NCBI GenBank assembly: GCA_950097015.1
Contig: CATNEN010000008.1
Coordinates: 3,472,001 to 3,536,000, forward strand
Reading direction: 5' to 3'
DNA: 64,000 bases
Source: Macrostomum hystrix
Lineage: Eukaryota > Animalia > Platyhelminthes
Shown: piece after piece, positions 4,699 to 34,576 of the stretch
How the letters are laid out: every line of letters starts with the position of its first letter
Numbering within the stretch: the first letter of the stretch is position 1
Made by a program: the position numbers and the translations under genes
Notes under the pieces: model-generated
Database searches by the model: none
Seen by the model: the letters and a program-made list of their open reading frames with translations, nothing else
What the model was told of the DNA's origin: nothing

Positions 4699-4716
4699 GT
4701 GAGATTCAGTGGCATT

Positions 4717-10500: not shown

Positions 10501-12826
10501 TTTTTCCAGTGAAATAGTAATTAATATGCGCACGTTACTACTCACTAAAAGCAACTAAAAAAATACGCCACCGCCCGCCCGTGCGTTGTTCTAGCACTAT
10601 AGAGGCCGGCTTGGCAGGATCTACTTCGCCAAGTACAGGCTGGCCGTTTGGATTCAGGCTGTAAGTAAATTCAACTCGAAGACCAAGACAGCAGATTCTT
10701 GTGCTGAAACTGCACCGTTGCTGCTGTCCGTTGATTTTTATGCCTCTCCAAGAACTGGTCTAACACCTTATTGCTTGGCTCGGTTGAATTGCACAACGGC
10801 TACCTCTGAGCCTATTTTTGTCTGCTTGTTTTGCAGCTGGTTGCTTTTAGCTGGGCACCAATTTGTAGATTTATTAGAAATCTGCCAAATTTCTTATCAA
10901 CTTGTCTGTTTGTCCGGTTTTAACACATCTTCATCTACTTCTCTTTAATATGATCTATTCCGCCTTCATTTCACCCCTTTCCGTCTTGATCTCACCCCTT
11001 TCCGCTTTAATCTCACCCCTTTCCGCTTTTATCTCACCCTTTCCGCTTTTATCTCACCCTTTCCGCCTTGATCTCACCTCTTTCTGCCTTAATCTCACCC
11101 CTTTCTACCTTAATCTCACCCCTTTCCGCCTTGATCTCACCCCTTTTCACCTTGATCTCATCCCTTTCCGCCTTGATCTCACCCCTTTTCACCTTGATCT
11201 CACCCCTTTCCGCCTTGATCTCACCCCTTTTCACCTTGATCTCACCCCTTTCCGCCTTCATCTCATATCTTTCCGCCTTCATCTCATATCTTTCCGCCTT
11301 CATCTCATATCTTTCCGCCTTGATCTCACCCCTTTTCACCTTGATCTCACCCCTTTCCGCCTTCATCTCATATCTTTCCGCCTTCATCTCATATCTTTCC
11401 GCCTTCATCTCATATCTTTCCGCCTTCATCTCATATCTTTCCGCCTTCATCTCATATCTTTCCGCCTTCATCTCATATCTTTCCGCCTTCATCTCATATC
11501 TTTCGGCCTTCATCTCATATCTTTCCGCCTTCATCTCATATCTTTCCGCCTTCATCTCATATCTTTCCGCCTTCATCTCATATCTTTCCGCCTTCATCTC
11601 ACCCTTTCTCATAGTGATTCAAAATAATTTAAAGCACTTAGATCATTACATGATTAGCCATTGCAGACAGCAAAGTAGCACTTGTTGTTGTCCTCTTTTA
11701 GTTTTTAATCCAACTTGAGCTGAATCTGGCTAAAGTGTGAATCTTTGTGCAATAATCTTCAGTTTTGAGTGAGTGCATGTGACCCTTTTCACGAGATTTT
11801 ATACGAGAGTAGCTCGTTGTTTTAATTTTTTTAAATCCGTGCGATAAAAGCAAAAAGTTACAATATTTGTAATTCTGCAGTTAAAAAATAATCTATTGTT
11901 CAAGCATGCTTATACTAGTTTAGTAATTAATAATTAATGAGGAGTCCGTCCCGTTTAAATTCTGTGGAGACTGAAGATTCCTTGCGTCCTACTATAAGTA
12001 GCGCTATTCGGTGATAATTATTTTAACTGAAAAAAGAAAAAATACTTTTTTGCCCTACTGTCAGTAGTGCATCGCGGAAATCATTACCTCTTTTTATTCC
12101 CAGCGAGTGCGCGGCCTCCTAGCCAGAATTCGCTATCAACGCCTGCGCGCCGCCTGGACCATCGCCGTGCGCTATCGCCGCTACCGGATTAGAGCCCACA
12201 TTCTTCGCGTCTGCGCCGCCTTCGCCGGAGTTGGCCAGCGTCGCGATCTCGGTCGCGGCGTCGAATGGCCTCGTGGGGAGCCTCCGGCCCTGGCCGGCCT
12301 GCTGGCCCAGCTGCGCCGGGTCCAAAACCGCTGGCGAGCCGAGCGCATGCTGGCCTCGATTCCCAGGCACGAGAGGCCGGAATTCCGGCTCAAACTGGCC
12401 AGCTGCGAGCTGCTGCTTGGCACCGACCGGCTGAGGGCCGGCCTGCCGCGCCGTTGGCTCGGCGAGTACCAGCTGCCCAGGCCGAGGGCGGCTGCCAAGA
12501 TGCCGGGCCAGCTGCTGTTCTCCCACCCGGTTCTGAAGGCCGAGCGCGGTGGCGGCTTCAAGTTGACCCGGCGGTGCCTCCTCATCAGCGGCCTGGGCGT
12601 TGCCAAGGCGGATCAGAACGGCGCCGCCCTGATTGGCCCAGTGCGCCAGTTGTCCGGCCTGGCCTGGGTGTCCCTGACTCGGCTGGCCACCGATCCCACC
12701 GTCTGCCTGGCGTTCGATGGCCGCGGCTCCGGTGGCGACCTTCTCATGGTGAGATTCAGTGGCATTGGGGGCGGATAAATCTAGGATTTGAGGGCGGATG
12801 AATCTAGGATTTGAGGGCGGATGAAT

Positions 12827-13516
12827 TGTGGTGCCGGTGTCTCTGGCCTTGTGGTTTTGTTAGGCCTTCCTCACCCAGCGCCGTCTTGGCTGCCCGGTGC
12901 CCAGTGCCGCCATCTGATTGGCTGGGCGCGGGCATTGTGTGCCTATCCTACCCCAGCCCTGCGTGGCTTTGCCCTCACGCCAATCAGCTCTGCGTAGCTT
13001 TGCCCGTCCACCCGTCCAGCGCGTACAACCCTACCCCCCAGCGCGCTGTAGGCTTTGTTTGTGCTCCGCCCCTGTCTGCCCCCTTGTCAGCCCTTAAGGT
13101 ATCGTTTTCTGCCCGGGCCAAGGCTACCTCTCTCCCCCTTGCGAACTTTAAAAGATCGTGCCGTAAAGACGGTCTCTTACGGCGAAGGCTCAATTTATTG
13201 CATAGCGAAGTGATTATTGAATAGTGATTCCGAGTGCATGGTTTATTAAAGTGCAAAAATTGCCGACAAATACATTCAGCGTCATCCTGCCATCCTATCG
13301 TGCGTCCCGACCGGTAAGCACTGTATTTGTGTCTGTCCTTTCGGGGTGCCAGGTCCGCACGGAGTACTGTAATAATCTTAGAAGTACTGTGTGAGCGTCC
13401 TAACGCCACCAGTCCCTGACTGCAACAGAGCGTCCTAACGCCTGATTCAGTGATCGATAATATTTTACTTAATAGGGCTGTGGGCCGGGGATCTCAAACC
13501 GACCACTGTCACTACA
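12827..13516 (+). repeat. 5' LTR, copy 1
   Basis: TGTGGTGCC...CACTACA; inverted CCAAT pair (12914-12922, 12979-12987), TATA-like CTTTAAAAG at 13146-13154, ATTAAA at 13245-13250. Confidence 0.97.
13160..13205 (+). other. Spliced-leader-like sequence inside the LTR (also at 20320-20365, 28824-28869 and 35984-36029)
   Basis: GCCGTAAAGACGGTCTCTTACGGCGAAGGCTCAATTTATTGCATAG; differs at 3 positions from the M. lignano SL as recalled (not database-checked); forms a GCCGTAA/TTACGGC hairpin. Confidence 0.8.
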
Positions 13517-13519
13517 AAT

Positions 13520-13537
13520 TGGCGCCCGAACGGGGAC
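13520..13537 (+). promoter_or_regulatory. Primer-binding site for tRNA-Lys(UUU)
   Basis: TGGCGCCCGAACGGGGAC, 3 nt after the LTR; 17/18 match to the lentiviral tRNA-Lys3 PBS TGGCGCCCGAACAGGGAC. Confidence 0.85.
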
Positions 13538-13678
13538 ACGGTCCCTCATTACCGATAGCAACTATTTGTCTCAGCGAGCATCAAGCGGCCTCATTCAGCA
13601 TCAACTGGGTCAACGAGAGTGCCAGCTATTGTTCTCTGTCTAGACTCACCTACGCCTAGCCTGACAGAACTTTAAGTC

Positions 13679-14587
13679 ATGGGAGATCAAGCCATGGACG
13701 ATCTGATCAACGCGCTGGCCACGCGCCTTAGGGCCAACGCGGAACGCACAGCGCCGAGAATTCCGAAGCCGCCCAAGTACGTCCCATCGATGAACTTCAA
13801 CTTGTGGCTGCAAAATTTCAACGAGTACTGCGGGATGGTCGACATTGAAGAAGGAGACCGAAGGCCACACCTAATCAGCCTCCTTGATCTCACAACGGCA
13901 TACGCCGCAGTAGACAAATTGGACCTCCCGGACGATCTTGAATACGGAGAATTTACGGCGAGGCTCGTAGCCCGATTCACCATGAACAGGACGGTGCAGG
14001 ACTACCGCTTCGAGCTTTCGAACCGTGACCAGCTAGATAAAGAGGCTGTCGAAACCTACGGAGACGAGCTGTTGGAGCTGGCCCGCAACGCCTTCCCCAC
14101 TGCAGACGCAGACACTAGGACCGAGCTGGCAAAGGACAGATTCTTGAAGGGTGTCCGAGTGTCCGACACCGTGCGAGAGAGGCTCTACCTGCAACAGCCG
14201 ACCGACCTCGCGGAGGCCATTCGGACAGTACGACAGCTGGAGGCCGCGCAGAGGGCATCTTCAGCACAGTCTAGAACGAGACCCAGAGCCGGACTGAATG
14301 TTCTGGCTGCAGAGACACCGGCCACCGCTCTGGACAAAGAAGAGGAGCTGCGCCTGCTGCGTCAGCAGGTGAAGACAATGGAGGAGAAAATACAACGCAT
14401 GGAAAGAAACCAGGCGCAGTCAACTCAAGCGGCACGACCAGAGGCGCGAGTAAACCAGACCGGCCCTTCGAATCCAAAACAACGCAACGGCGTCACGTGC
14501 TACCGTTGCGGCGAGGTCGGACACCTGTCGTTCCAGTGCCAGAATTCGGGAAAAGACAGGAGGGGCCCACGTCCTGGAGGCAACTGA
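13679..14587 (+). CDS. gag: Gag (302 aa) with CCHC zinc knuckle
   Basis: ATG-initiated ORF after the PBS; CYRCGEVGHLSFQC = CX2CX4HX4C; capsid-like helical region. Confidence 0.93.
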   Translation: MGDQAMDDLINALATRLRANAERTAPRIPKPPKYVPSMNFNLWLQNFNEYCGMVDIEEGDRRPHLISLLDLTTAYAAVDKLDLPDDLEYGEFTARLVARFTMNRTVQDYRFELSNRDQLDKEAVETYGDELLELARNAFPTADADTRTELAKDRFLKGVRVSDTVRERLYLQQPTDLAEAIRTVRQLEAAQRASSAQSRTRPRAGLNVLAAETPATALDKEEELRLLRQQVKTMEEKIQRMERNQAQSTQAARPEARVNQTGPSNPKQRNGVTCYRCGEVGHLSFQCQNSGKDRRGPRPGGN

Positions 14588-17500
14588 GCCCCTGCTATTC
14601 GCCAGCCTCAAACCAGCATCATCAGCAACCCCAGCCTCACATTCAGCATCATCAGCAACCCCAGCCTCACATTCAGCATCATCAGCAAGCACTGCCTGGC
14701 AACCAGCATCATCAGCAAGCACTGCCTGGCAACCAGCATCATCAGCAAGCACTGCCTGGCAATCAGCAACATCAGCAAGCACTGCCTGGCAACCAGCATC
14801 ATCAGCAAGCACTGCCTGGCAACCAGCATCATCAGCAACCCCAGCCTCACATTCAGCATCATCAGCAAGCACTGCCTGGCAACCAGCATCATCAGCAAGC
14901 ACTGCCTGGCAATCAGCATCATCAGCAACCCCAGCCAGGCATCCAGCATCATCATCAACCCCAGCCTGGCAACCAGCAGCATCAGCAACCACAGCCTGGC
15001 ACCCAGCGTCATCGCAGATCGAGGCGCAAGAAGACAAAAGCGGGGCTGTCTACACCGCTAAGGCAACCATCGAGCCCACCTATTCAGATCAATCCGGTAT
15101 CAATTTTTGTCACCATTAATGTAGCCGAAAAGAAGCTAGACGCTTTAGTGGACTCTGGAGCATCGTGCTCTATCATGTCCACGGAGACCTACGAAAGCTT
15201 GCCGAACTCTAGAATCCAAGTCCTGGCAGGAGCAGAAGGTCATGTCAGCTTGGCAAACGGGAGTCCGATCTCTATCGAGAAGACAGTACAGTTGCCTGTG
15301 GCCATAGCTGGAAAACTCATCAGCACACCGGTACTGGTGGTCAGTGGAATCAAATACCAGCTGGTCCTAGGATCGGACTTCTGTAGGGACAACAGCTGTG
15401 TCATCGACTACCAGCATGCAGCGTTTAGAGTGGGCGAAAGCTCCATCCCGATCCGATGGCAGGCAGAACGACCGCTAGTGTGCAGGATCCTGTCACAAAG
15501 GTCACGAACTCTAAAACCAGGTCAGCAGATCGTCCTCCCTGGAAGGCTCGAAAGGAAAGGCCAGCGAAATAGCGGCTGTCTTGGCATCACCGAGAACCTG
15601 AGTCAGCTCAACCTCGAGTCCGGACGCTGCCTGGCCAAGGCTCTCGTAATACCATCAGAAAAAGCGCTGGTGCCGGCGAGACTCGTTAATCTAACAGAGG
15701 AGCCAGTACGAATTAGGAGAGGTAGCACGCTGGGTTGGTTCTGCCCACTTGAAGTCGCGGAACCGTTTAACACAGTCGAGCTACTTGCCATGGAATCTGA
15801 TCCGTCTCGAAGTGCGGGTCTCAGCAAAGGCGATCCAAACGAACTAGAAATTTCGGAGCTGCTGCCCAACTCCTATGGGTCCTGTGGGCTGACCAGTGAT
15901 GAAAACTCTGCCTTTCAAGATCTAATCTGGAAATACCGAGACGTGTTTGCGACCAAGCAGTCCGCGCCAAAAGTCACCACAGTGGTACAGCACGGAATTG
16001 ACACGACGAACGCGCGGCCCATCAAGATTCCACCGCGCCGATTGCCGCCGCACCTCCAGCCAGAAGTGGACCACCAAATTGACGAGCTGCTGGAAAAAGG
16101 CCAAATAGAAGTGGCACAGTCGCCTTGGTGCTCGCCACTCGTTTGCGTCCGTAAGAAGAGCGGAGAAATGAGGATGTGTGTGGATTATCGCAAGCTTAAC
16201 GATGTCACCGTCAAAGACGCAGTGCCTATGCCGAGAGTCGACGATGCATTGGAGGCCCTTCATGGGGCACAGATCTTCTCGACTATGGACCTGCACAGTG
16301 GGTTTTGGCAGGTCGGCATGTCTCCGAAGGACAAGGACAAGACAGCTTTTTCAGTGCCACACCGGGGACAATTCCGATGGAAAGTCATGCCGTTTGGCTT
16401 GGTGAACAGCCCGGCGACCTTTACCAGGTTGATGGCAGCGGTGTTGGACAAGCAGATGTGGAGAACTTGTTTGGTCTACATTGACGACCTGCTAGTGTGG
16501 TCTGCCGACGTCGCGGAACATCTGCGTCGATTGGAGGAAATCTTTGAAAAGCTTCAACTGGCTAATCTTAGCTTGAAGCCACAAAAATGCCACTTTCTGC
16601 AAAAAGAAGTTGAGTTCCTGGGGCACAAGGTCTCCGCCACAGGTATCAGCACGGAAGAGTCCAAAGTCCAGGAAGTGAGAGACTGGCCAACGCCAAAGAA
16701 CCTGTCGGAGCTGCAGTCTTTCTTAGGGTTGTGTGGCTACTACCGGAGATTCATCAGAAATTTTTCCGAGATCGCCGCACCATTGACTCTGTTGACAACT
16801 AAAGGCGCAAAGTTCCGATGGGAGGAGGAGCAGGAGACTGCCTTCGAAGCATTAAAACAGAATTTGACGAGCTCTGAAGTCATGGCACATCCGGACTTTT
16901 CGCCTACGGCTGGTGAGTTCGTGCTCGACACCGATGGAAGCTCAAAGGTTGGAATCGGGGCCGTACTCTCGCAAGTCCAGACCGATGGTTCGGAGCGAGT
17001 GATCGCGTATGCCTCAAAGTCGCTGAATCAAGCAGAGCGCAATTACTGCACGACACGATTAGAGCTGCTGGCAGTGGTGACGTTCGTTGCCAAGTTCAAA
17101 TACTACCTTCTCGGCAAAGAATTCTGCCTGCGCACTGACCACAGCAGCCTCCAGTGGCTAAAGAACTTCAAGGATGCTGAGGGACAGGTGGCACGTTGGC
17201 TGGAGAAGCTGGCACCGTTCCAGTACAGGATCGTCCACCGGCCAGGTCGAGCCCACGTCAATGCGGATGCAATGTCCCGAAAGCCGGTTGTAAGAAAGCA
17301 TTTTGGCGCCGACTCATGCCCTGTCTGTGCAAGTGGGTATAGCAACAGGATCAACAGCATCGAACTGCGAGGCTTTTCAGCAGCAGATCTCAAGCGCGAA
17401 CAGGATGAGGACGGTGACCTACGGGCTGTCAAGAATGCACTGATCCTTATTACTCAGTCGCCAAATGCGGGAGAGATCGACACCACGGCCTGGAGTCCAC

Positions 17501-18912
17501 TGGCAAGAGGAATTTGGGCGCGACGAGATGATTTGCTGCTCCAAGAAGAGACGCTGTTCATACGTGACAAGAACAAGAGCGACAAGCAACTCATCGTGCT
17601 CCCACAAAGCTGTCTTCCAAGGACGTTGAAAAGCTTGCACCAGGGTGTCGGAGGCGGCCACATGGGCTACGCGAAGACGAAACACAAGATGTTGCAGCGT
17701 TTCTGGCGGCCAGGTCTGGCCCGGGCGATTGAGGAGTTTATTCGAGGATGCGCTGTCTGCTGCAAAGCGAAAGCAGGGAAGAAGAATCGCGCCCCTCTAA
17801 AACCTCTCACATTTGCCGCACCATTCGACTGCATCATGGTGGACATTGTTGGGCCACTGCCGCGAAGCAAAGCCGGAAACTCGTACATTCTGACTGTCCA
17901 AGACTCCTTCACTAAGTGGCCAGACGCCTACCCATTGCGCAATCAGAAAGCGAAGACGGTTGCAAAAGTCCTGTTCGACAGATGGATTAGTCAGCATGGT
18001 TGTCCGAACACGCTGCACAGTGACCAAGGAAGAAACTTCGAGTCCAAAATCGTGCGAGAGATGTGCCGGATGCTCGAGATCAGGAAGTCGCGGACTACAG
18101 CCTACCATCCAAGTGGAAATGGACAGGTTGAAAACTTCAACAAGAGCTTGAAGTCCATGCTCAAGTGCTGCCTAGAAGACGCCGGACGGAACGACTGGGA
18201 GGAGTTCGTGAGTTCAGCGTTGATGGCGTACCGATCGAGCGTCCACAGAGGCACAGGCTACACGCCCCACTACATGGTCTACGGTACGGAGATGCGCCTG
18301 CCTATCGATCTGTCCGACCAGCCGCCCCAGCGCGTGAGCTCGCATGTGGAATTCGTCAAAGACCTGGAGATCAAATTGCAGACGGCTCATCGCGCTGCGC
18401 GGATGCAGCTAAACACGTATCAGAGAAGGCAGAAGGACCACTACGACAAAAAAACTCGGGGTTCCGACATCAAGGAGGGCGACCACGTCTTTATCTACAG
18501 TCCCGCACTGAAGCCTGACGAAGCAGCGAAGTTTCACATCAGTTGGCGAGGACCTGTCCGTGTACTCTGCAAAATCTCAGAGGTTCTGTTCAAGGTAGAG
18601 AATCCGTCGAACCACAGGAAAACGAAAGTCGTCCACTTCAACAACCTCCGGAAGTTCCAAGTACAGGAGGTGAAAGGGCCGGAGACCGAGCCGGACGACG
18701 TACAGTCCGAAGCCGAAGAACCCGAGCAAGATCAGGAAGAGGAAGACTGGCATCCTGGACACCAGAGGAAAGACCCAGTTAGACCTAACCCGGAGGTTCA
18801 GGCCGAACTGCCGCCGGAGCATGAGGAACCGGAGGAGGTGGAATTCGAACCACGAAGGTCCGGCAGAACACGCCGACAACCTGATCGATATGGCCAGCCT
18901 GTGCTGTACTGA
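14497..18912 (+). CDS. pol: Pol polyprotein (protease, RT, RNase H, integrase), probably expressed by -1 frameshift from about 14548
   Basis: LVDSGAS protease; YIDD RT; DTDGS...IGAVL RNase H; H-X6-H...CAVC zinc finger, DIVGP/HSDQG/QVENFN D-D-E, and WRGPV GPY/F-like integrase motifs. No stops. Confidence 0.98.
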   Translation: MLPLRRGRTPVVPVPEFGKRQEGPTSWRQLSPCYSPASNQHHQQPQPHIQHHQQPQPHIQHHQQALPGNQHHQQALPGNQHHQQALPGNQQHQQALPGNQHHQQALPGNQHHQQPQPHIQHHQQALPGNQHHQQALPGNQHHQQPQPGIQHHHQPQPGNQQHQQPQPGTQRHRRSRRKKTKAGLSTPLRQPSSPPIQINPVSIFVTINVAEKKLDALVDSGASCSIMSTETYESLPNSRIQVLAGAEGHVSLANGSPISIEKTVQLPVAIAGKLISTPVLVVSGIKYQLVLGSDFCRDNSCVIDYQHAAFRVGESSIPIRWQAERPLVCRILSQRSRTLKPGQQIVLPGRLERKGQRNSGCLGITENLSQLNLESGRCLAKALVIPSEKALVPARLVNLTEEPVRIRRGSTLGWFCPLEVAEPFNTVELLAMESDPSRSAGLSKGDPNELEISELLPNSYGSCGLTSDENSAFQDLIWKYRDVFATKQSAPKVTTVVQHGIDTTNARPIKIPPRRLPPHLQPEVDHQIDELLEKGQIEVAQSPWCSPLVCVRKKSGEMRMCVDYRKLNDVTVKDAVPMPRVDDALEALHGAQIFSTMDLHSGFWQVGMSPKDKDKTAFSVPHRGQFRWKVMPFGLVNSPATFTRLMAAVLDKQMWRTCLVYIDDLLVWSADVAEHLRRLEEIFEKLQLANLSLKPQKCHFLQKEVEFLGHKVSATGISTEESKVQEVRDWPTPKNLSELQSFLGLCGYYRRFIRNFSEIAAPLTLLTTKGAKFRWEEEQETAFEALKQNLTSSEVMAHPDFSPTAGEFVLDTDGSSKVGIGAVLSQVQTDGSERVIAYASKSLNQAERNYCTTRLELLAVVTFVAKFKYYLLGKEFCLRTDHSSLQWLKNFKDAEGQVARWLEKLAPFQYRIVHRPGRAHVNADAMSRKPVVRKHFGADSCPVCASGYSNRINSIELRGFSAADLKREQDEDGDLRAVKNALILITQSPNAGEIDTTAWSPLARGIWARRDDLLLQEETLFIRDKNKSDKQLIVLPQSCLPRTLKSLHQGVGGGHMGYAKTKHKMLQRFWRPGLARAIEEFIRGCAVCCKAKAGKKNRAPLKPLTFAAPFDCIMVDIVGPLPRSKAGNSYILTVQDSFTKWPDAYPLRNQKAKTVAKVLFDRWISQHGCPNTLHSDQGRNFESKIVREMCRMLEIRKSRTTAYHPSGNGQVENFNKSLKSMLKCCLEDAGRNDWEEFVSSALMAYRSSVHRGTGYTPHYMVYGTEMRLPIDLSDQPPQRVSSHVEFVKDLEIKLQTAHRAARMQLNTYQRRQKDHYDKKTRGSDIKEGDHVFIYSPALKPDEAAKFHISWRGPVRVLCKISEVLFKVENPSNHRKTKVVHFNNLRKFQVQEVKGPETEPDDVQSEAEEPEQDQEEEDWHPGHQRKDPVRPNPEVQAELPPEHEEPEEVEFEPRRSGRTRRQPDRYGQPVLY
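14548..14593 (+). promoter_or_regulatory. Putative -1 ribosomal frameshift signal (also at 30212-30257)
   Basis: G GGA AAA heptamer in the gag frame, 6-nt spacer, stem AGGGGC (14561-14566) / GCCCCT (14588-14593); pol is in the -1 frame. Confidence 0.7.
14611..15000 (+). repeat. Coding 30-bp tandem repeat x13 (NQHHQQALPG / IQHHQQPQPH) in the pol N-terminus (also at 30275-30664)
   Basis: 13 units counted from the translation. Confidence 0.95.
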
Positions 18913-19256
18913 GGCCCGCGAGTCGAGCAAAGCGACATCAAACTGCACGTTTCGTCGCATCATCTGATGTTCAGTAGCGTCCCGACGTGGATCTCTGCTA
19001 AAGATACTATCAGATTGCGTCATGCTCCCCGGTGTGAGTGGTCGGAGGGGACCCCGGCCTTCCTAGCCGCGTATTATTTAGCACGTACTTTACTGTATGT
19101 TCGTTTGGTGTAGGGTTTACTTGTACCGTATGTGTTCGTATGTACTAAACCTGGCATTCTGGGAGGGTGGACACGGGCCGCCTCTGCCGGCAGGTACAAG
19201 GCATCATCGCAGCCCCATGCCTGGTAACATCACTTCCCTGGCTGCAACGCCGCTCG

Positions 19257-19790: not shown

Positions 19791-19975
19791 TACATAGCCT
19801 AGACGTGCGTCCCTACAGTCTTGCCGCGCTCTGCCAACCCCAGTGCCTCCCTGTCCAGTGCCAGTAACTTTCGTTTCGTTCCTTTTGTTTACATTTAAAT
19901 TTCGGTCGGTCGACGTCGTTTATCCCAGTGTCTTCTTTTCCCAGTTTCATCCTTATGCGTGTATTTTGCTTTTTT

Positions 19976-19987
19976 AGGAGGGGAGGA
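19976..19987 (+). promoter_or_regulatory. Polypurine tract (also at 35640-35651)
   Basis: AGGAGGGGAGGA abutting the 3' LTR and preceded by a T-tract. Confidence 0.9.
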
Positions 19988-20676
19988 TGTGGTGCCGGTG
20001 TCTCTGGCCTTGTGGTTTTGTTAGGCCTTCCTCACCCAGCGCCGTCTTGGCTCAGAGTGCCCGGTGCCGCCATCTGATTGGCTGGGCGCGGGCATTGTGT
20101 GCCTATCCTACCCCAGCCCTGCGTGGCTTTGCCCTCACGCCAATCAGCTCTGCGTAGCTTTGCCCGTCCACCCGTCCAGCGCGTACAACCCTACCCCCCA
20201 GCGCGCTGTAGGCTTTGTTTGTGCTCCGCCCCTGTCTGCCCCCTTGTCAGCCCTTAAGGTATCGTTTTCTGCCCGGGCCAAGGCTACCTCTCTCCCCCTT
20301 GCGAACTTTAAAAGATCGTGCCGTAAAGACGGTCTCTTACGGCGAAGGCTCAATTTATTGCATAGCGAAGTGATTATTGAATAGTGATTCCGAGTGCATG
20401 GTTTATTAAAGTGCAAAAATTGCCGACAAATACATTCAGCGTCATCCTGCCATCCTATCGTGCGTCCCGACCGGTAAGCACTGTATTTGTGTCTGTCCTT
20501 TCGGGGTGCCAGGTCCGCACGGAGTACTGTAATAATCTTAGAAGTACTGTGTGAGCGTCCTAACGCCACCAGTCCCTGACTGCAACAGAGCGTCCTAACG
20601 CCTGATTCAGTGATCGATAATATTTTACTTAATAGGGCTGTGGGCCGGGGATCTCAAACCGACCACTGTCACTACA
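19988..20676 (+). repeat. 3' LTR, copy 1
   Basis: Appears identical to the 5' LTR except for one clustered patch at 20053-20063. Confidence 0.97.
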
Positions 20677-26800: not shown

Positions 26801-29342
26801 TCACCCCTTTTCACCTTGATCTCATCCCTTTCCGCCTTGATCTCACCCCTTTTCACCTTGATCTCACCCCTTTCCGCCTTGATCTCACCCCTTTTCACCT
26901 TGATCTCACCCCTTTCCGCCTTCATCTCATATCTTTCCGCCTTCATCTCATATCTTTCCGCCTTCATCTCATATCTTTCCGCCTTGATCTCACCCCTTTT
27001 CACCTTGATCTCACCCCTTTCCGCCTTCATCTCATATCTTTCCGCCTTCATCTCATATCTTTCCGCCTTCATCTCATATCTTTCCGCCTTCATCTCATAT
27101 CTTTCCGCCTTCATCTCATATCTTTCCGCCTTCATCTCATATCTTTCCGCCTTCATCTCATATCTTTCGGCCTTCATCTCATATCTTTCCGCCTTCATCT
27201 CATATCTTTCCGCCTTCATCTCATATCTTTCCGCCTTCATCTCATATCTTTCCGCCTTCATCTCACCCTTTCTCATAGTGATTCAAAATAATTTAAAGCA
27301 CTTAGATCATTACATGATTAGCCATTGCAGACAGCAAAGTAGCACTTGTTGTTGTCCTCTTTTAGTTTTTAATCCAACTTGAGCTGAATCTGGCTAAAGT
27401 GTGAATCTTTGTGCAATAATCTTCAGTTTTGAGTGAGTGCATGTGACCCTTTTCACGAGATTTTATACGAGAGTAGCTCGTTGTTTTAATTTTTTTAAAT
27501 CCGTGCGATAAAAGCAAAAAGTTACAATATTTGTAATTCTGCAGTTAAAAAATAATCTATTGTTCAAGCATGTTTATACTAGTTTAGTAATTAATAATTA
27601 ATGAGGAGTCCGTCCCGTTTAAATTCTGTGGAGACTGAAGATTCCTTGCGTCCTACTATAAGTAGCGCTATTCGGTGATAATTATTTTAACTGAAAAAAG
27701 AAAAAATACTTTTTTGCCCTACTGTCAGTAGTGCATCGCGGAAATCATTACCTCTTTTTATTCCCAGCGAGTGCGCGGCCTCCTAGCCAGAATTCGCTAT
27801 CAACGCCTGCGCGCCGCCTGGACCATCGCCGTGCGCTATCGCCGCTACCGGATTAGAGCCCACATTCTTCGCGTCTGCGCCGCCTTCGCCGGAGTTGGCC
27901 AGCGTCGCGATCTCGGTCGCGGCGTCGAATGGCCTCGTGGGGAGCCTCCGGCCCTGGCCGGCCTGCTGGCCCAGCTGCGCCGGGTCCAAAACCGCTGGCG
28001 AGCCGAGCGCATGCTGGCCTCGATTCCCAGGCACGAGAGGCCGGAATTCCGGCTCAAACTGGCCAGCTGCGAGCTGCTGCTTGGCACCGACCGGCTGAGG
28101 GCCGGCCTGCCGCGCCGTTGGCTCGGCGAGTACCAGCTGCCCAGGCCGAGGGCGGCTGCCAAGATGCCGGGCCAGCTGCTGTTCTCCCACCCGGTTCTGA
28201 AGGCCGAGCGCGGCGGCGGCTTCAAGTTGACCCGGCGGTGCCTCCTCATCAGCGGCCTGGGCGTTGCCAAGGCGGATCAGAACGGCGCCGCCCTGATTGG
28301 CCCAGTGCGCCAGTTGTCCGGCCTGGCCTGGGTGTCCCTGACTCGGCTGGCCACCGATCCCACCGTCTGCCTGGCGTTCGATGGCCGCGGCTCCGGTGGC
28401 GACCTTCTCATGGTGAGATTCAGTGGCATTGGGGGCGGATAAATCTAGGATTTGAGGGCGGATGAATCTAGGATTTGAGGGCGGATGAATTGTGGTGCCG
28501 GTGTCTCTGGCCTTGTGGTTTTGTTAGGCCTTCCTCACCCAGCGCCGTCTTGGCTGCCCGGTGCCCAGTGCCGCCATCTGATTGGCTGGGCGCGGGCATT
28601 GTGTGCCTATCCTACCCCAGCCCTGCGTGGCTTTGCCCTCACGCCAATCAGCTCTGCGTAGCTTTGCCCGTCCACCCGTCCAGCGCGTACAACCCTACCC
28701 CCCAGCGCGCTGTAGGCTTTGTTTGTGCTCCGCCCCTGTCTGCCCCCTTGTCAGCCCTTAAGGTATCGTTTTCTGCCCGGGCCAAGGCTACCTCTCTCCC
28801 CCTTGCGAACTTTAAAAGATCGTGCCGTAAAGACGGTCTCTTACGGCGAAGGCTCAATTTATTGCATAGCGAAGTGATTATTGAATAGTGATTCCGAGTG
28901 CATGGTTTATTAAAGTGCAAAAATTGCCGACAAATACATTCAGCGTCATCCTGCCATCCTATCGTGCGTCCCGACCGGTAAGCACTGTATTTGTGTCTGT
29001 CCTTTCGGGGTGCCAGGTCCGCACGGAGTACTGTAATAATCTTAGAAGTACTGTGTGAGCGTCCTAACGCCACCAGTCCCTGACTGCAACAGAGCGTCCT
29101 AACGCCTGATTCAGTGATCGATAATATTTTACTTAATAGGGCTGTGGGCCGGGGATCTCAAACCGACCACTGTCACTACAAATTGGCGCCCGAACGGGGA
29201 CACGGTCCCTCATTACCGATAGCAACTATTTGTCTCAGCGAGCATCAAGCGGCCTCATTCAGCATCAACTGGGTCAACGAGAGTGCCAGCTATTGTTCTC
29301 TGTCTAGACTCACCTACGCCTAGCCTGACAGAACTTTAAGTC

Positions 29343-30251
29343 ATGGGAGATCAAGCCATGGACGATCTGATCAACGCGCTGGCCACGCGCCTTAGGGCCA
29401 ACGCGGAACGCACAGCGCCGAGAATTCCGAAGCCGCCCAAGTACGTCCCATCGATGAACTTCAACTTGTGGCTGCAAAATTTCAACGAGTACTGCGGGAT
29501 GGTCGACATTGAAGAAGGAGACCGAAGGCCACACCTAATCAGCCTCCTTGATCTCACAACGGCATACGCCGCAGTAGACAAATTGGACCTCCCGGACGAT
29601 CTTGAATACGGAGAATTTACGGCGAGGCTCGTAGCCCGATTCACCATGAACAGGACGGTGCAGGACTACCGCTTCGAGCTTTCGAACCGTGACCAGCTAG
29701 ATAAAGAGGCTGTCGAAACCTACGGAGACGAGCTGTTGGAGCTGGCCCGCAACGCCTTCCCCACTGCAGACGCAGACACTAGGACCGAGCTGGCAAAGGA
29801 CAGATTCTTGAAGGGTGTCCGAGTGTCCGACACCGTGCGAGAGAGGCTCTACCTGCAACAGCCGACCGACCTCGCGGAGGCCATTCGGACAGTACGACAG
29901 CTGGAGGCCGCGCAGAGGGCATCTTCAGCACAGTCTAGAACGAGACCCAGAGCCGGACTGAATGTTCTGGCTGCAGAGACACCGGCCACCGCTCTGGACA
30001 AAGAAGAGGAGCTGCGCCTGCTGCGTCAGCAGGTGAAGACAATGGAGGAGAAAATACAACGCATGGAAAGAAACCAGGCGCAGTCAACTCAAGCGGCACG
30101 ACCAGAGGCGCGAGTAAACCAGACCGGCCCTTCGAATCCAAAACAACGCAACGGCGTCACGTGCTACCGTTGCGGCGAGGTCGGACACCTGTCGTTCCAG
30201 TGCCAGAATTCGGGAAAAGACAGGAGGGGCCCACGTCCTGGAGGCAACTGA
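29343..30251 (+). CDS. gag: Gag, copy 2
   Basis: Translation identical to copy 1. Confidence 0.93.
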   Translation: MGDQAMDDLINALATRLRANAERTAPRIPKPPKYVPSMNFNLWLQNFNEYCGMVDIEEGDRRPHLISLLDLTTAYAAVDKLDLPDDLEYGEFTARLVARFTMNRTVQDYRFELSNRDQLDKEAVETYGDELLELARNAFPTADADTRTELAKDRFLKGVRVSDTVRERLYLQQPTDLAEAIRTVRQLEAAQRASSAQSRTRPRAGLNVLAAETPATALDKEEELRLLRQQVKTMEEKIQRMERNQAQSTQAARPEARVNQTGPSNPKQRNGVTCYRCGEVGHLSFQCQNSGKDRRGPRPGGN

Positions 30252-33200
30252 GCCCCTGCTATTCGCCAGCCTCAAACCAGCATCATCAGCAACCCCAGCC
30301 TCACATTCAGCATCATCAGCAACCCCAGCCTCACATTCAGCATCATCAGCAAGCACTGCCTGGCAACCAGCATCATCAGCAAGCACTGCCTGGCAACCAG
30401 CATCATCAGCAAGCACTGCCTGGCAATCAGCAACATCAGCAAGCACTGCCTGGCAACCAGCATCATCAGCAAGCACTGCCTGGCAACCAGCATCATCAGC
30501 AACCCCAGCCTCACATTCAGCATCATCAGCAAGCACTGCCTGGCAACCAGCATCATCAGCAAGCACTGCCTGGCAATCAGCATCATCAGCAACCCCAGCC
30601 AGGCATCCAGCATCATCATCAACCCCAGCCTGGCAACCAGCAGCATCAGCAACCACAGCCTGGCACCCAGCGTCATCGCAGATCGAGGCGCAAGAAGACA
30701 AAAGCGGGGCTGTCTACACCGCTAAGGCAACCATCGAGCCCACCTATTCAGATCAATCCGGTATCAATTTTTGTCACCATTAATGTAGCCGGAAAGAAGC
30801 TAGACGCTTTAGTGGACTCTGGAGCATCGTGCTCTATCATGTCCACGGAGACCTACGAAAGCTTGCCGAACTCTAGAATCCAAGTCCTGGCAGGAGCAGA
30901 AGGTCATGTCAGCTTGGCAAACGGGAGTCCGATCTCTATCGAGAAGACAGTACAGTTGCCTGTGGCCATAGCTGGAAAACTCATCAGCACACCGGTACTG
31001 GTGGTCAGTGGAATCAAATACCAGCTGGTCCTAGGATCGGACTTCTGTAGGGACAACAGCTGTGTCATCGACTACCAGCATGCAGCGTTTAGAGTGGGCG
31101 AAAGCTCCATCCCGATCCGATGGCAGGCAGAACGACCGCTAGTGTGCAGGATCCTGTCACAAAGGTCACGAACTCTAAAACCAGGTCAGCAGATCGTCCT
31201 CCCTGGAAGGCTCGAAAGGAAAGGCCAGCGAAATAGCGGCTGTCTTGGCATCACCGAGAACCTGAGTCAGCTCAACCTCGAGTCCGGACGCTGCCTGGCC
31301 AAGGCTCTCGTAATACCATCAGAAAAAGCGCTGGTGCCGGCGAGACTCGTTAATCTAACAGAGGAGCCAGTACGAATTAGGAGAGGTAGCACGCTGGGTT
31401 GGTTCTGCCCACTTGAAGTCGCGGAACCGTTTAACACAGTCGAGCTACTTGCCATGGAATCTGATCCGTCTCGAAGTGCGGGTCTCAGCAAAGGCGATCC
31501 AAACGAACTAGAAATTTCGGAGCTGCTGCCCAACTCCTATGGGTCCTGTGGGCTGACCAGTGATGAAAACTCTGCCTTTCAAGATCTAATCTGGAAATAC
31601 CGAGACGTGTTTGCGACCAAGCAGTCCGCGCCAAAAGTCACCACAGTGGTACAGCACGGAATTGACACGACGAACGCGCGGCCCATCAAGATTCCACCGC
31701 GCCGATTGCCGCCGCACCTCCAGCCAGAAGTGGACCACCAAATTGACGAGCTGCTGGAAAAAGGCCAAATAGAAGTGGCACAGTCGCCTTGGTGCTCGCC
31801 ACTCGTTTGCGTCCGTAAGAAGAGCGGAGAAATGAGGATGTGTGTGGATTATCGCAAGCTTAACGATGTCACCGTCAAAGACGCAGTGCCTATGCCGAGA
31901 GTCGACGATGCATTGGAGGCCCTTCATGGGGCACAGATCTTCTCGACTATGGACCTGCACAGTGGGTTTTGGCAGGTCGGCATGTCTCCGAAGGACAAGG
32001 ACAAGACAGCTTTTTCAGTGCCACACCGGGGACAATTCCGATGGAAAGTCATGCCGTTTGGCTTGGTGAACAGCCCGGCGACCTTTACCAGGTTGATGGC
32101 AGCGGTGTTGGACAAGCAGATGTGGAGAACTTGTTTGGTCTACATTGACGACCTGCTAGTGTGGTCTGCCGACGTCGCGGAACATCTGCGTCGATTGGAG
32201 GAAATCTTTGAAAAGCTTCAACTGGCTAATCTTAGCTTGAAGCCACAAAAATGCCACTTTCTGCAAAAAGAAGTTGAGTTCCTGGGGCACAAGGTCTCCG
32301 CCACAGGTATCAGCACGGAAGAGTCCAAAGTCCAGGAAGTGAGAGACTGGCCAACGCCAAAGAACCTGTCGGAGCTGCAGTCTTTCTTAGGGTTGTGTGG
32401 CTACTACCGGAGATTCATCAGAAATTTTTCCGAGATCGCCGCACCATTGACTCTGTTGACAACTAAAGGCGCAAAGTTCCGATGGGAGGAGGAGCAGGAG
32501 ACTGCCTTCGAAGCATTAAAACAGAATTTGACGAGCTCTGAAGTCATGGCACATCCGGACTTTTCGCCTACGGCTGGTGAGTTCGTGCTCGACACCGATG
32601 GAAGCTCAAAGGTTGGAATCGGGGCCGTACTCTCGCAAGTCCAGACCGATGGTTCGGAGCGAGTGATCGCGTATGCCTCAAAGTCGCTGAATCAAGCAGA
32701 GCGCAATTACTGCACGACACGATTAGAGCTGCTGGCAGTGGTGACGTTCGTTGCCAAGTTCAAATACTACCTTCTCGGCAAAGAATTCTGCCTGCGCACT
32801 GACCACAGCAGCCTCCAGTGGCTAAAGAACTTCAAGGATGCTGAGGGACAGGTGGCACGTTGGCTGGAGAAGCTGGCACCGTTCCAGTACAGGATCGTCC
32901 ACCGGCCAGGTCGAGCCCACGTCAATGCGGATGCAATGTCCCGAAAGCCGGTTGTAAGAAAGCATTTTGGCGCCGACTCATGCCCTGTCTGTGCAAGTGG
33001 GTATAGCAACAGGATCAACAGCATCGAACTGCGAGGCTTTTCAGCAGCAGATCTCAAGCGCGAACAGGATGAGGACGGTGACCTACGGGCTGTCAAGAAT
33101 GCACTGATCCTTATTACTCAGTCGCCAAATGCGGGAGAGATCGACACCACGGCCTGGAGTCCACTGGCAAGAGGAATTTGGGCGCGACGAGATGATTTGC

Positions 33201-34576
33201 TGCTCCAAGAAGAGACGCTGTTCATACGTGACAAGAACAAGAGCGACAAGCAACTCATCGTGCTCCCACAAAGCTGTCTTCCAAGGACGTTGAAAAGCTT
33301 GCACCAGGGTGTCGGAGGCGGCCACATGGGCTACGCGAAGACGAAACACAAGATGTTGCAGCGTTTCTGGCGGCCAGGTCTGGCCCGGGCGATTGAGGAG
33401 TTTATTCGAGGATGCGCTGTCTGCTGCAAAGCGAAAGCAGGGAAGAAGAATCGCGCCCCTCTAAAACCTCTCACATTTGCCGCACCATTCGACTGCATCA
33501 TGGTGGACATTGTTGGGCCACTGCCGCGAAGCAAAGCCGGAAACTCGTACATTCTGACTGTCCAAGACTCCTTCACTAAGTGGCCAGACGCCTACCCATT
33601 GCGCAATCAGAAAGCGAAGACGGTTGCAAAAGTCCTGTTCGACAGATGGATTAGTCAGCATGGTTGTCCGAACACGCTGCACAGTGACCAAGGAAGAAAC
33701 TTCGAGTCCAAAATCGTGCGAGAGATGTGCCGGATGCTCGAGATCAGGAAGTCGCGGACTACAGCCTACCATCCAAGTGGAAATGGACAGGTTGAAAACT
33801 TCAACAAGAGCTTGAAGTCCATGCTCAAGTGCTGCCTAGAAGACGCCGGACGGAACGACTGGGAGGAGTTCGTGAGTTCAGCGTTGATGGCGTACCGATC
33901 GAGCGTCCACAGAGGCACAGGCTACACGCCCCACTACATGGTCTACGGTACGGAGATGCGCCTGCCTATCGATCTGTCCGACCAGCCGCCCCAGCGCGTG
34001 AGCTCGCATGTGGAATTCGTCAAAGACCTGGAGATCAAATTGCAGACGGCTCATCGCGCTGCGCGGATGCAGCTAAACACGTATCAGAGAAGGCAGAAGG
34101 ACCACTACGACAAAAAAACTCGGGGTTCCGACATCAAGGAGGGCGACCACGTCTTTATCTACAGTCCCGCACTGAAGCCTGACGAAGCAGCGAAGTTTCA
34201 CATCAGTTGGCGAGGACCTGTCCGTGTACTCTGCAAAATCTCAGAGGTTCTGTTCAAGGTAGAGAATCCGTCGAACCACAGGAAAACGAAAGTCGTCCAC
34301 TTCAACAACCTCCGGAAGTTCCAAGTACAGGAGGTGAAAGGGCCGGAGACCGAGCCGGACGACGTACAGTCCGAAGCCGAAGAACCCGAGCAAGATCAGG
34401 AAGAGGAAGACTGGCATCCTGGACACCAGAGGAAAGACCCAGTTAGACCTAACCCGGAGGTTCAGGCCGAACTGCCGCCGGAGCATGAGGAACCGGAGGA
34501 GGTGGAATTCGAACCACGAAGGTCCGGCAGAACACGCCGACAACCTGATCGATATGGCCAGCCTGTGCTGTACTGA
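30161..34576 (+). CDS. pol: Pol polyprotein, copy 2
   Basis: Identical to copy 1 except VAGKKLDAL versus VAEKKLDAL (G at 30792 versus A at 15128). Confidence 0.98.
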   Translation: MLPLRRGRTPVVPVPEFGKRQEGPTSWRQLSPCYSPASNQHHQQPQPHIQHHQQPQPHIQHHQQALPGNQHHQQALPGNQHHQQALPGNQQHQQALPGNQHHQQALPGNQHHQQPQPHIQHHQQALPGNQHHQQALPGNQHHQQPQPGIQHHHQPQPGNQQHQQPQPGTQRHRRSRRKKTKAGLSTPLRQPSSPPIQINPVSIFVTINVAGKKLDALVDSGASCSIMSTETYESLPNSRIQVLAGAEGHVSLANGSPISIEKTVQLPVAIAGKLISTPVLVVSGIKYQLVLGSDFCRDNSCVIDYQHAAFRVGESSIPIRWQAERPLVCRILSQRSRTLKPGQQIVLPGRLERKGQRNSGCLGITENLSQLNLESGRCLAKALVIPSEKALVPARLVNLTEEPVRIRRGSTLGWFCPLEVAEPFNTVELLAMESDPSRSAGLSKGDPNELEISELLPNSYGSCGLTSDENSAFQDLIWKYRDVFATKQSAPKVTTVVQHGIDTTNARPIKIPPRRLPPHLQPEVDHQIDELLEKGQIEVAQSPWCSPLVCVRKKSGEMRMCVDYRKLNDVTVKDAVPMPRVDDALEALHGAQIFSTMDLHSGFWQVGMSPKDKDKTAFSVPHRGQFRWKVMPFGLVNSPATFTRLMAAVLDKQMWRTCLVYIDDLLVWSADVAEHLRRLEEIFEKLQLANLSLKPQKCHFLQKEVEFLGHKVSATGISTEESKVQEVRDWPTPKNLSELQSFLGLCGYYRRFIRNFSEIAAPLTLLTTKGAKFRWEEEQETAFEALKQNLTSSEVMAHPDFSPTAGEFVLDTDGSSKVGIGAVLSQVQTDGSERVIAYASKSLNQAERNYCTTRLELLAVVTFVAKFKYYLLGKEFCLRTDHSSLQWLKNFKDAEGQVARWLEKLAPFQYRIVHRPGRAHVNADAMSRKPVVRKHFGADSCPVCASGYSNRINSIELRGFSAADLKREQDEDGDLRAVKNALILITQSPNAGEIDTTAWSPLARGIWARRDDLLLQEETLFIRDKNKSDKQLIVLPQSCLPRTLKSLHQGVGGGHMGYAKTKHKMLQRFWRPGLARAIEEFIRGCAVCCKAKAGKKNRAPLKPLTFAAPFDCIMVDIVGPLPRSKAGNSYILTVQDSFTKWPDAYPLRNQKAKTVAKVLFDRWISQHGCPNTLHSDQGRNFESKIVREMCRMLEIRKSRTTAYHPSGNGQVENFNKSLKSMLKCCLEDAGRNDWEEFVSSALMAYRSSVHRGTGYTPHYMVYGTEMRLPIDLSDQPPQRVSSHVEFVKDLEIKLQTAHRAARMQLNTYQRRQKDHYDKKTRGSDIKEGDHVFIYSPALKPDEAAKFHISWRGPVRVLCKISEVLFKVENPSNHRKTKVVHFNNLRKFQVQEVKGPETEPDDVQSEAEEPEQDQEEEDWHPGHQRKDPVRPNPEVQAELPPEHEEPEEVEFEPRRSGRTRRQPDRYGQPVLY

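What the first reader, a model, noticed from the sequence alone, without database searches (positions are those of the whole stretch)
13160..13205. Host spliced-leader (SL)-like sequence embedded in every LTR of an intact Gypsy retrotransposon
Seen in sequence: all four LTRs contain GCCGTAAAGACGGTCTCTTACGGCGAAGGCTCAATTTATTGCATAG (13160, 20320, 28824, 35984). It lies between a TATA-like box (13146) and the LTR ATTAAA (13245), where R should begin, and folds into GCCGTAA/TTACGGC plus AGA/TCT. Recalled, not checked: the Macrostomum lignano SL is GCCGTAAAGACGGTCTCTTACTGCGAAGACTCAATTTATTGCATG. The LTR version then differs at three points. T>G converts a stem mismatch into a C-G pair, A>G is a simple substitution, and an inserted A destroys the terminal AUG that flatworm SLs carry. 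Established: SL-linked retroelements such as NeSL, SLACS and CZAR are non-LTR elements that insert into SL genes. I know of no LTR element that encodes an SL mimic in its own R region. Inference: a trans-spliced genomic RNA was reverse-transcribed and the leader became fixed at the U3/R border. Element mRNA would then look like a trans-spliced host mRNA, gaining translation, export or silencing evasion while avoiding an upstream AUG before gag. It would also create false trans-splicing calls in SL-seq data.
Basis: partly seen in the sequence, partly recalled or inferred. Interest (0 to 1): 0.92.

Follow-up and report, generated by a model that had tools for sequence, protein, structure and literature searches.

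The report
Spliced-leader relic in retrotransposon LTRs
Each long terminal repeat of this flatworm Gypsy retrotransposon holds a slightly mutated DNA copy of the host's 45-nt spliced leader, most likely left when a trans-spliced element RNA was reverse-transcribed; other retrotransposon families in the same genome carry the same scar, and it has been noted briefly in parasitic flatworms.

Summary
The 46-mer occurs exactly four times, each inside a 690-bp LTR. It matches the host's spliced-leader (SL) exon at 43 of 45 positions plus one inserted A. The similarity starts at SL nt 1 and ends at the splice-donor junction. Three corrections apply:
- The genome is Macrostomum hystrix, not M. lignano; the two species share the same SL.
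- The four LTRs are one insertion, copied by a 15.7-kb tandem duplication.
- The TATA-like motif lies only 13 nt upstream, so a transcription start at SL nt 1 is not supported.

The motif is not peculiar to this element. About 140 intron-less SL copies exist beside 19 real SL RNA genes. At least 65 of those examined sit in LTRs of four families: this Gypsy lineage, two BEL/Pao families and one unclassified family. Every relative of this LTR has one at the same place.

Best reading: a relic of reverse transcription of a trans-spliced element RNA, marking an ancestral U3/R border and inherited as DNA since. The mimicry function is untested. Contig-only RNA data could not map the start site.

The same explanation appears briefly in print for schistosomes (2018) and parasitic flatworms (2025). 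Earlier first-stage notes of this scan flagged the same thing elsewhere in this genome.

The parts
12823..12826 (+). Target-site duplication GAAT, 5' copy; the 3' copy is at 20677-20680
   Evidence: Read directly. The element sits in a 22-bp minisatellite, so the duplication is consistent but not unique.
12827..13516 (+). 5' LTR, 690 bp, TG..CA
   Evidence: Self-BLAST and sequence. It differs from the 3' LTR only in a cluster at 12892-12903 and by one base at the end.
13147..13154 (+). TATA-like TTTAAAAG, 13 nt upstream of SL nt 1. Relatives have TTTAAGA at the same place.
   Evidence: Related elements from another host (L115, L116, L118) have TTAAGG or TATAT motifs in a comparable LTR position. 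Its function is inferred.
13160..13205 (+). SL-derived segment: 43/45 identical to the host SL exon plus one inserted A at 13204
13206..13268 (+). Lineage-specific segment between the SL copy and the conserved 'caaataca...' U5-side block. It holds a 3-codon uORF (ATG at 13238) and ATTAAA at 13245-13250.
   Evidence: Found only in the 21 LTR copies of this family. Pairwise identity across relatives is 0.16-0.30. ATG count. The poly(A)-signal role is inferred.
13520..13537 (+). Primer-binding site TGGCGCCCGAACGGGGAC, 3 nt after the LTR
   Evidence: The same site follows the LTR in BEL/Pao families and in foreign relatives. That it is a tRNA-Lys type is from memory; the host tRNA was not verified.
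13679..14587 (+). gag ORF, 302 aa, with a CCHC zinc knuckle
14497..18912 (+). pol ORF, 1471 aa: protease, RT, RNase H, integrase. It overlaps gag in another frame.
19976..19987 (+). Polypurine tract aggaggggagga, abutting the 3' LTR
19988..20676 (+). 3' LTR, with the SL-derived segment at 20320-20365
28491..36340 (+). Second copy of the whole element, made by tandem duplication of element plus flank (offset 15664). SL-derived segments at 28824-28869 and 35984-36029.
   Evidence: 5' LTRs identical to each other, 3' LTRs identical to each other.

Best explanation
The 46-mer is a DNA relic of the host spliced leader.

Origin. In an ancestor of this Ty3/Gypsy lineage, an element RNA that had received the SL by trans-splicing served as the template for reverse transcription. 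Minus-strand strong-stop DNA is a run-off copy of the RNA's 5' end. After the first strand transfer, that end is joined to U3. The complete SL exon was therefore fixed directly after U3 in both LTRs, that is, at the U3/R border of that time.

Since then. The copy has been inherited as ordinary LTR DNA and has drifted: A>G and T>G are shared with close relatives, and the extra A is the youngest change. It remains one of the better-conserved LTR blocks because it lies in the promoter-proximal/R region. The SL is not re-added at each replication cycle.

Shown: SL identity, exon-exact limits, presence in all relatives and in unrelated families, and the Gypsy anatomy.
Inferred: the capture route, the U3/R assignment, and the absence of a special function.
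For: 1. SL identity. The copy is 43/45 identical to the SL exon, against 8/30 and 11/30 in the flanks of the real gene. Real genes continue gtaagacacc; the LTR does not.
2. Exon-exact 3' limit. Relatives at 75-91% LTR identity read ...GCATG followed directly by CGAAGTG. The junction was therefore exactly the exon end, and the extra A is derived.
3. Exact 5' limit. The copy starts at the 5' end seen in transcript-derived SLs.
4. Ancestral in the lineage. All 18 full relatives found by whole-LTR similarity carry an SL-like block at the same place.
5. Recurrent in the genome. 161 hits to a 22-nt SL core, against 0 for the reversed control. Only 19 are genes with the intron. Among the fetched sites, 24 are Gypsy-C, 23 BEL/Pao-B, 15 BEL/Pao-A and 3 family D. 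BEL/Pao identity comes from Pfam. In those families the SL lies 13-49 nt before the primer-binding site.
6. Inherited, not refreshed. Family-specific SL variants are fixed across many copies.
7. Precedent for trans-splicing of an LTR-element RNA: C. elegans Cer1 (PMC3315495).
8. The same explanation has been offered for flatworm retrotransposons.
Against: - No 5'-end data. The RNA runs were contigs and cannot place the transcription start.
- The TATA-like motif is only 13 nt upstream, so today's start may lie inside the SL copy rather than at nt 1.
- Capture needs a strand transfer with a non-homologous SL tail, a rare event that was not demonstrated.
- The SL block is conserved better than much of the LTR in distant relatives: 85-91% against 66-69% in U3. 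That leaves room for a function.
Confidence: 0.65

Rival explanations
1. Adaptive SL mimic. Transcription starts at or near SL nt 1, so element RNA carries a DNA-encoded leader resembling trans-spliced host mRNA. It gains in translation, export or escape from silencing. The T>G and the extra A would be adaptive.
For: - The SL block is among the conserved LTR blocks, with 0.83-0.92 pairwise identity. It is better kept than U3 in distant relatives.
- The leader 13160-13678 has a single ATG, so losing the SL's AUG fits selection against upstream AUGs.
- In BEL/Pao family A, a TAAATATAT motif sits about 33-37 nt before SL nt 1, which would put the start at about nt 1.
Against: - In this Gypsy lineage the TATA-like motif is 13 nt upstream.
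- A DNA-encoded leader would carry an m7G cap, not the trimethylguanosine cap of real SLs (established knowledge).
- The fold is not significant and not conserved.
- Relatives keep the AUG, and near-identical copies keep T at nt 22.
- Other U3 blocks are conserved more strongly, 0.89-0.97.
- No expression or translation data exist.
Confidence: 0.15
2. The SL copy is the working R repeat. It is the homology used for first-strand transfer. Because every trans-spliced RNA carries the same sequence, SL copies can be exchanged, or partly renewed, by template switching or by fresh trans-splicing of element RNA.
For: - In BEL/Pao families, SL plus 13-49 nt is all that lies between U3 and the primer-binding site.
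- LTR similarity switches at SL nt 1. The L074 5' LTR is 95% like B2 LTRs in U3, but 82% in the SL and 69% after it (p<1e-6).
- The two LTRs of L074 share SL+U5 but only 84% of U3.
- A four-change block (nt 7, 8, 9, 14) is shared by families A and B2, whose U3 are unrelated. It is the main difference between near-identical LTRs such as L058 or L110 and B2.
- Family A copies L002 and L049 carry a fully canonical SL behind a typical family-A U3.
- In this element CATAG|, and in family A CATAAG|, place an AG at the SL/body junction.
Against: - Family-specific variants are stable over many copies, so renewal is at most occasional.
- Graded series from canonical to variant can also be read as plain divergence.
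- Ordinary DNA recombination could produce the mosaics.
- For the Gypsy family itself, only one polymorphic site (nt 22) exists.
- Most families have no AG at the junction.
Confidence: 0.12
3. DNA-level capture: an ancestor inserted into, or recombined with, an SL RNA gene and kept a fragment.
For: SL RNA genes are multicopy, with 19 copies in ~11.6-kb repeats. Retroelements that target SL genes are known (NeSL, SLACS, CZAR; from memory).
Against: The similarity stops exactly at both exon ends, and the flanks are at chance level. There is no intron or Sm region in any of the LTR copies seen. None of the LTR copies lies in the SL gene arrays.
Confidence: 0.03
4. Chance similarity or an assembly artefact.
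For: The region is highly repetitive, and the two elements in the window may reflect a collapsed or expanded tandem unit.
Against: Shuffled and reversed controls gave 0 matches. There are 21 LTR copies on 9 contigs. RNA-run contigs join U3 to the SL copy, at 12985-13203 in three runs.
Confidence: 0.01

Closest known systems
Genome-encoded SL exons in flatworm retrotransposons: S. mansoni (Boroni et al. 2018, PMC5832876) and 24 parasitic flatworm species (MBE 2025, PMC12582326)
   Same: Intron-less SL exon copies sit inside mobile elements, 'primarily LTR and LINE'. The authors interpret them as integrated copies of retrotransposon transcripts that had been trans-spliced.
   Different: In those papers they were by-products discarded from SL-gene screens, described as partial leaders, and possibly assembly chimeras. 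No position within the LTR, family survey or age was given. Here the leader is complete. It sits at a fixed place in both LTRs of intact elements, in a free-living macrostomid, in both the Gypsy and BEL/Pao superfamilies.
SL relics in dinoflagellate retrogenes (e.g. PMC12014239)
   Same: DNA-encoded SL remnants at the 5' end of sequences that passed through an RNA intermediate (abstract).
   Different: Those are host-gene retrocopies, not autonomous LTR elements that keep copying the relic through their own replication.
Cer1 (Ty3/Gypsy) of C. elegans
   Same: An LTR-retrotransposon transcript that is SL trans-spliced (PMC3315495).
   Different: In Cer1 only the 2.4-kb spliced mRNA receives SL1. 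The 8-kb genomic RNA does not, and no SL copy in the LTR is reported.
Cassandra TRIM elements of plants
   Same: LTRs that carry a copy of a host small-RNA gene sequence (5S rDNA) and keep it conserved (abstract).
   Different: Cassandra holds gene-internal Pol III promoter sequence that drives its own transcription. The SL copy here is the spliced exon only, without the SL gene's promoter, intron or Sm site.
NeSL, SLACS and CZAR
   Different: They are non-LTR elements that insert into SL RNA genes. Here an LTR element carries the SL exon inside its own LTR and inserts elsewhere, in a minisatellite in this window.

Membership tests
Ty3/Gypsy LTR retrotransposon | Two near-identical LTRs ending TG..CA, flanked by a short target-site duplication | tested here: met
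   690-bp LTRs differing at about 2 events; GAAT on both sides.
Ty3/Gypsy LTR retrotransposon | Primer-binding site after the 5' LTR and polypurine tract before the 3' LTR | tested here: met
   13520-13537 and 19976-19987. The cognate host tRNA was not verified.
Ty3/Gypsy LTR retrotransposon | gag with a zinc knuckle; pol in the order protease, RT, RNase H, integrase | tested here: met
   Pfam hits in that order along the 1471-aa ORF.
SL relic (retro-copied trans-spliced RNA) | Matches the host's own SL exon | tested here: met
   43/45 plus a 1-nt insertion, compared with the SL genes of the same genome and with published SLs.
SL relic (retro-copied trans-spliced RNA) | Similarity limited to the exon: starts at nt 1, ends at the donor junction, with no intron or Sm region | tested here: met
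   Flanks are at chance level. Relatives read GCATG|CGAAGTG. The intron pattern is found only in 19 genes.
SL relic (retro-copied trans-spliced RNA) | Element RNA is (or was) a trans-splicing substrate | not testable with these tools
   Only contigs were available. The SL-to-internal joints at 14357, 14937 and 14973 lack AG acceptors and lie in a low-complexity repeat.
Functional SL RNA gene | GT splice donor directly after the exon, then intron hairpins and an Sm-like site | tested here: not met
   The LTR reads CATAG|CGAAGTG, while genes read CATG|gtaagacacc. Rfam gave no hit in the window.
SL-gene-targeting non-LTR elements (NeSL/SLACS/CZAR) | Non-LTR structure, inserted within SL RNA genes | tested here: not met
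   The element has LTR structure. Copies are dispersed on 9 contigs outside the SL arrays.
R region of the LTR (SL copy inside the transcribed repeat) | Lies between the transcription start and the poly(A) site | tested here: inconclusive
   ATTAAA lies 86 nt downstream. The TATA-like motif is 13 nt upstream, which predicts a start near SL nt 18. Contigs cannot show ends.

The most novel reading that the evidence does not exclude
In Macrostomum the host spliced leader has become the working R repeat of several LTR-retrotransposon lineages. First-strand transfer would use SL-to-SL homology. Element RNAs, heterologous elements and even host trans-spliced mRNAs could then exchange or renew LTR 5' ends, by template switching or by fresh trans-splicing at the AG created at the SL/body junction. 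Replication would become partly independent of a precise transcription start, and U3 regions would be shuffled between families.
Probability: 0.12. Interest if true: 0.8.

Novelty: new member of a known kind. Interest (0 to 1): 0.45.

Why it matters
- It shows, with sequence-level anatomy, that LTR-retrotransposon genomic RNAs in an SL trans-splicing animal can be trans-spliced and still complete reverse transcription. The leader is left as a dated scar at the U3/R border.
- The scar has arisen or spread in both Gypsy and BEL/Pao elements.
- It raises a concrete question for retroelement biology: how does first-strand transfer cope with a foreign 5' end?
- It offers a natural marker for the RNA 5' ends of ancestral elements.
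- It is a practical warning. About 140 genome-encoded SL copies in M. hystrix can be mistaken for SL RNA genes. They can also create false trans-splicing sites when SL-containing reads are trimmed and mapped.

Tried and rejected
- **The repeat finder:** swamped by a 10/20-bp satellite. Replaced by self-BLAST.
- **Rfam, gathering threshold:** nothing in the window.
- **RNA evidence:** the one sequencing-run search found no run on record as RNA. Three runs behave like RNA-seq: the SL bin has depth ~40,000 against ~5 elsewhere, and Illumina adapter abuts the SL. They are stored as contigs, so neither transcription start nor poly(A) site could be read.
- **Joints from the SL to 14357, 14937 and 14973:** rejected as evidence of internal trans-splicing. 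They have no AG, a 22-nt side, and lie in a CAG/CAT-rich 30-bp repeat.
- **Host-mRNA origin of the segment after the SL (13204-13275):** rejected. It occurs only in this family's 21 LTRs.
- **A second SL gene variant as the source of the ATGA..G block:** not found. All 19 genes are canonical.
- **Cross-species test through gag homologues:** relatives at 50-56% identity from a JGI metagenome have full 5' LTRs without the Macrostomum SL. Their host and its SL are unknown, so this says nothing either way. The Logan contigs were too short.
- **Literature:** the Macrostomum LTR-retrotransposon paper (PMC12801592) and the SL papers (PMC8629364, PMC10468722) do not mention SL copies in LTRs.

Full report
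**1. The observation**

The 46-mer occurs four times, exactly, on the + strand at 13160, 20320, 28824 and 35984. None of 100 shuffles gave a match.

Self-comparison shows 690-bp direct repeats at 12827-13516, 19988-20676, 28491-29180 and 35652-36340. The whole stretch 8525-24515 is repeated at 24223-40159 with 99.2% identity. The two 5' LTRs are identical to each other, and so are the two 3' LTRs. The window therefore holds one insertion that was later duplicated in tandem with its flanks, at an offset of 15664. 'All four LTRs' amounts to two independent LTRs.

**2. The host and its spliced leader**

The genome has 220,453,370 bases in 42 contigs. Contig C7 measures 13,505,968 and C38 measures 35,345,953. 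These are exactly the published figures for the Macrostomum hystrix assembly (PMC10468722). The host is M. hystrix, not M. lignano.

The published M. lignano 35-nt SL (PMC8629364) occurs 23 times exactly in this genome. Genuine SL RNA genes read GCCGTAAAGA, then that 35-mer, then gtaagacacc.... A search for the intron finds 19 such genes. All carry the canonical 35-nt core; two of them (C1:16047913 and C42:73829) differ in the first ~10-12 nt of the exon. Apart from the lone C1 copy, they lie in ~11.6-kb repeats on C15, C17 and C42. Transcript-derived SLs are the same 45 nt in M. cliftonense and the same sequence less two 5' bases in M. hystrix.

The LTR copy differs by T>G at nt 22, A>G at nt 29, and an inserted A before the last G. 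Identity is 43/45 inside the exon. In the 30 nt on either side of the real gene it is 8/30 and 11/30, which is chance level.

**3. The element**

It is an intact Ty3/Gypsy element:
- TG..CA LTRs and a GAAT target duplication.
- A primer-binding site TGGCGCCCGAACGGGGAC, 3 nt after the 5' LTR.
- A polypurine tract before the 3' LTR.
- A 302-aa gag with a CCHC knuckle.
- An overlapping 1471-aa pol with protease, RT, RNase H and integrase, in that order.

The LTRs differ at one small cluster (12892-12903) and one terminal base. The genome holds 21 LTR copies at 97% identity or more, on nine contigs. They include four further pairs spaced 7.2-8.4 kb apart.

**4. Where the SL copy sits**

It occupies LTR positions 334-379. 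TTTAAAAG lies at 13147-13154, only 13 nt before SL nt 1. Relatives have TTTAAGA at the same distance. With the usual ~30-nt TATA-to-start spacing (established knowledge), transcription would begin near SL nt 18, not nt 1. ATTAAA lies 86 nt after SL nt 1.

The leader from 13160 to the gag ATG at 13679 has a single ATG, a 3-codon uORF at 13238.

It is not significant (z -1.5), and the canonical SL and a BEL/Pao variant fold differently.

**5. Relatives of this LTR**

A whole-LTR search found diverged relatives at 75-92% identity. I fetched 20. Every full one carries an SL-like block at the same place; two are fragments without that region.

The closer group (L088-L094) reads ...GCATG followed directly by CGAAGTG.... 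The original junction was therefore the exact exon end, and the extra A is a late single-base insertion in the youngest subfamily. A>G is shared across that closer group (L088 reads GAAAGC there instead), while T>G is shared by only part of it: L088 and L094 keep T at nt 22. Three near-identical copies (C10, C14, C39) also keep T at nt 22.

A more distant group (L078-L087) keeps 33-41 of 45 positions. It lacks the ~63-nt segment 13206-13268, which is found only in this family's own 21 LTRs.

Across the alignment, the SL block has 0.83-0.92 mean pairwise identity. That is similar to or below a U3 block at 12985-13029 (0.89-0.97) and far above the segment after it (0.16-0.30). Against the most distant of the closer relatives, the SL is 85-91% identical while U3 is 66-69%.

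**6. The wider census**

A 22-nt core of the SL (up to 2 mismatches) hits 161 places. The reversed control hits none. Only 19 are genes.

I fetched the flanks of about 90 distinct sites and sorted them by flank:
- 24 in this Gypsy lineage.
- 23 in BEL/Pao family B.
- 15 in BEL/Pao family A.
- 3 in a fourth LTR family.
- 21 others, some of which look like 5'-truncated retrocopies of trans-spliced mRNAs.

BEL/Pao identity rests on DUF1759, Peptidase_A17, RVT_1, DUF5641 and integrase hits in L071, L074 and L077.

In these families U3 and U5 are unrelated to those of the Gypsy lineage. Even so, the SL again starts at nt 1 directly after U3. It is followed by only 13 nt (family A) or 43-49 nt (family B) before CA and the primer-binding site. 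A U3-only search for family B found 23 LTRs, all with the SL. The capture therefore happened at least twice, once per superfamily, or else spread between them.

**7. How it most likely arose**

Reverse transcription of LTR elements copies the RNA's 5' end into strong-stop DNA and then joins it to U3 (established retroviral mechanism). A complete leader directly after U3, limited exactly to the exon, is what a trans-spliced template would leave. Trans-splicing of an LTR-element RNA is documented for Cer1 in C. elegans.

The first capture needs a strand transfer in spite of a non-homologous SL tail. That step is inferred. Afterwards the copy is inherited as DNA, since family-specific variants are stable across many copies.

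**8. Hints of something more**

These come from the BEL/Pao families, not from the Gypsy element:
- LTR similarity switches at SL nt 1. The L074 5' LTR is 95% like B2-type LTRs in U3, but 82% in the SL and 69% after it.
- The two LTRs of L074 share SL+U5 yet only 84% of U3.
- A block of four changes (SL nt 7, 8, 9, 14) is shared by families A and B2, whose U3 are unrelated. It is the main difference between otherwise near-identical LTRs.
- No SL gene has that variant.

These patterns fit template switching within an SL that serves as R. Plain recombination and stepwise divergence are not excluded.

**9. RNA data**

No run is on record as RNA. Three runs of one study behave like RNA-seq, and their contigs cover the element body thinly. 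They join U3 to the SL copy (12985-13203) and the polypurine tract to U3. Contigs cannot give starts or ends.

All contigs over 13181 show the canonical T. No row appeared for 13188, which I cannot explain.

**10. Literature**

I found no report of this in Macrostomum. The kind is already in print, though:
- Boroni et al. 2018 found SL exons merged to transposable elements in S. mansoni. They suggested 'trans-spliced retro-transcribed elements'.

What is added here is the anatomy: a complete leader at a fixed place in both LTRs, near-identical LTR pairs, two superfamilies, and conservation across a lineage. First-stage notes of this scan flagged the same thing in other windows of this genome.

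**11. Verdict**

The feature is real and is correctly traced to the host SL. The RNA-capture origin is well supported. The U3/R assignment is reasonable for the ancestor but unproven for today's transcripts. The mimicry function is untested, and the novelty claim was overstated.

Noticed in passing
window 222-47333: The region is a higher-order array of minisatellites (periods 30, 16, 21 and 22 bp) repeated about four times. The element sits in the 22-bp array of one unit. The paralogous arrays at 4714-5898 and 44317-45738 are uninterrupted, so they serve as empty sites. The unit carrying the element was then duplicated.
   Followed up: partly
window 14611-15013 and 19167-19802: A 30-bp coding tandem repeat (Gln/His/Pro-rich) lies at the start of the pol ORF. 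A third ORF of 211 aa lies between pol and the 3' LTR; it has no Pfam hit and holds a 175-bp repeat (19297-19713).
   Followed up: no
G000 C39:12,667,884-12,685,526 and beyond: A ~927-bp satellite carries an SL-like 35-mer (3 mismatches, ending GCATG) in every unit.
   Followed up: no
L074 (G000 C7:8555800-8562400), L066, L058, L100, L110: BEL/Pao LTRs are mosaics whose similarity switches at SL nt 1. A four-change block inside the SL copy (nt 7, 8, 9, 14) is shared by families with unrelated U3 regions.
   Followed up: partly
L033, L034, L047, L018, L004 (G000 C25, C32, C38, C37, C7): Single SL copies outside LTR families, some 5'-truncated within the leader and followed by unique sequence. 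They look like retrocopies of trans-spliced host mRNAs. L001 and L018 look like degenerate SL genes.
   Followed up: no
L115, L116, L118 (JGI metagenome 3300040801): Gypsy elements with gag 50-56% identical to this one. They have the same type of primer-binding site and the same repeated GAGCGTC..ACGCC motif in U5, from an unknown host. Their LTRs have no Macrostomum SL.
   Followed up: partly
window 13188 in read-laying output: Contigs of the abundant canonical SL show the expected T at 13181, but no difference is listed at 13188, where the canonical SL has A and the LTR has G.
   Followed up: no
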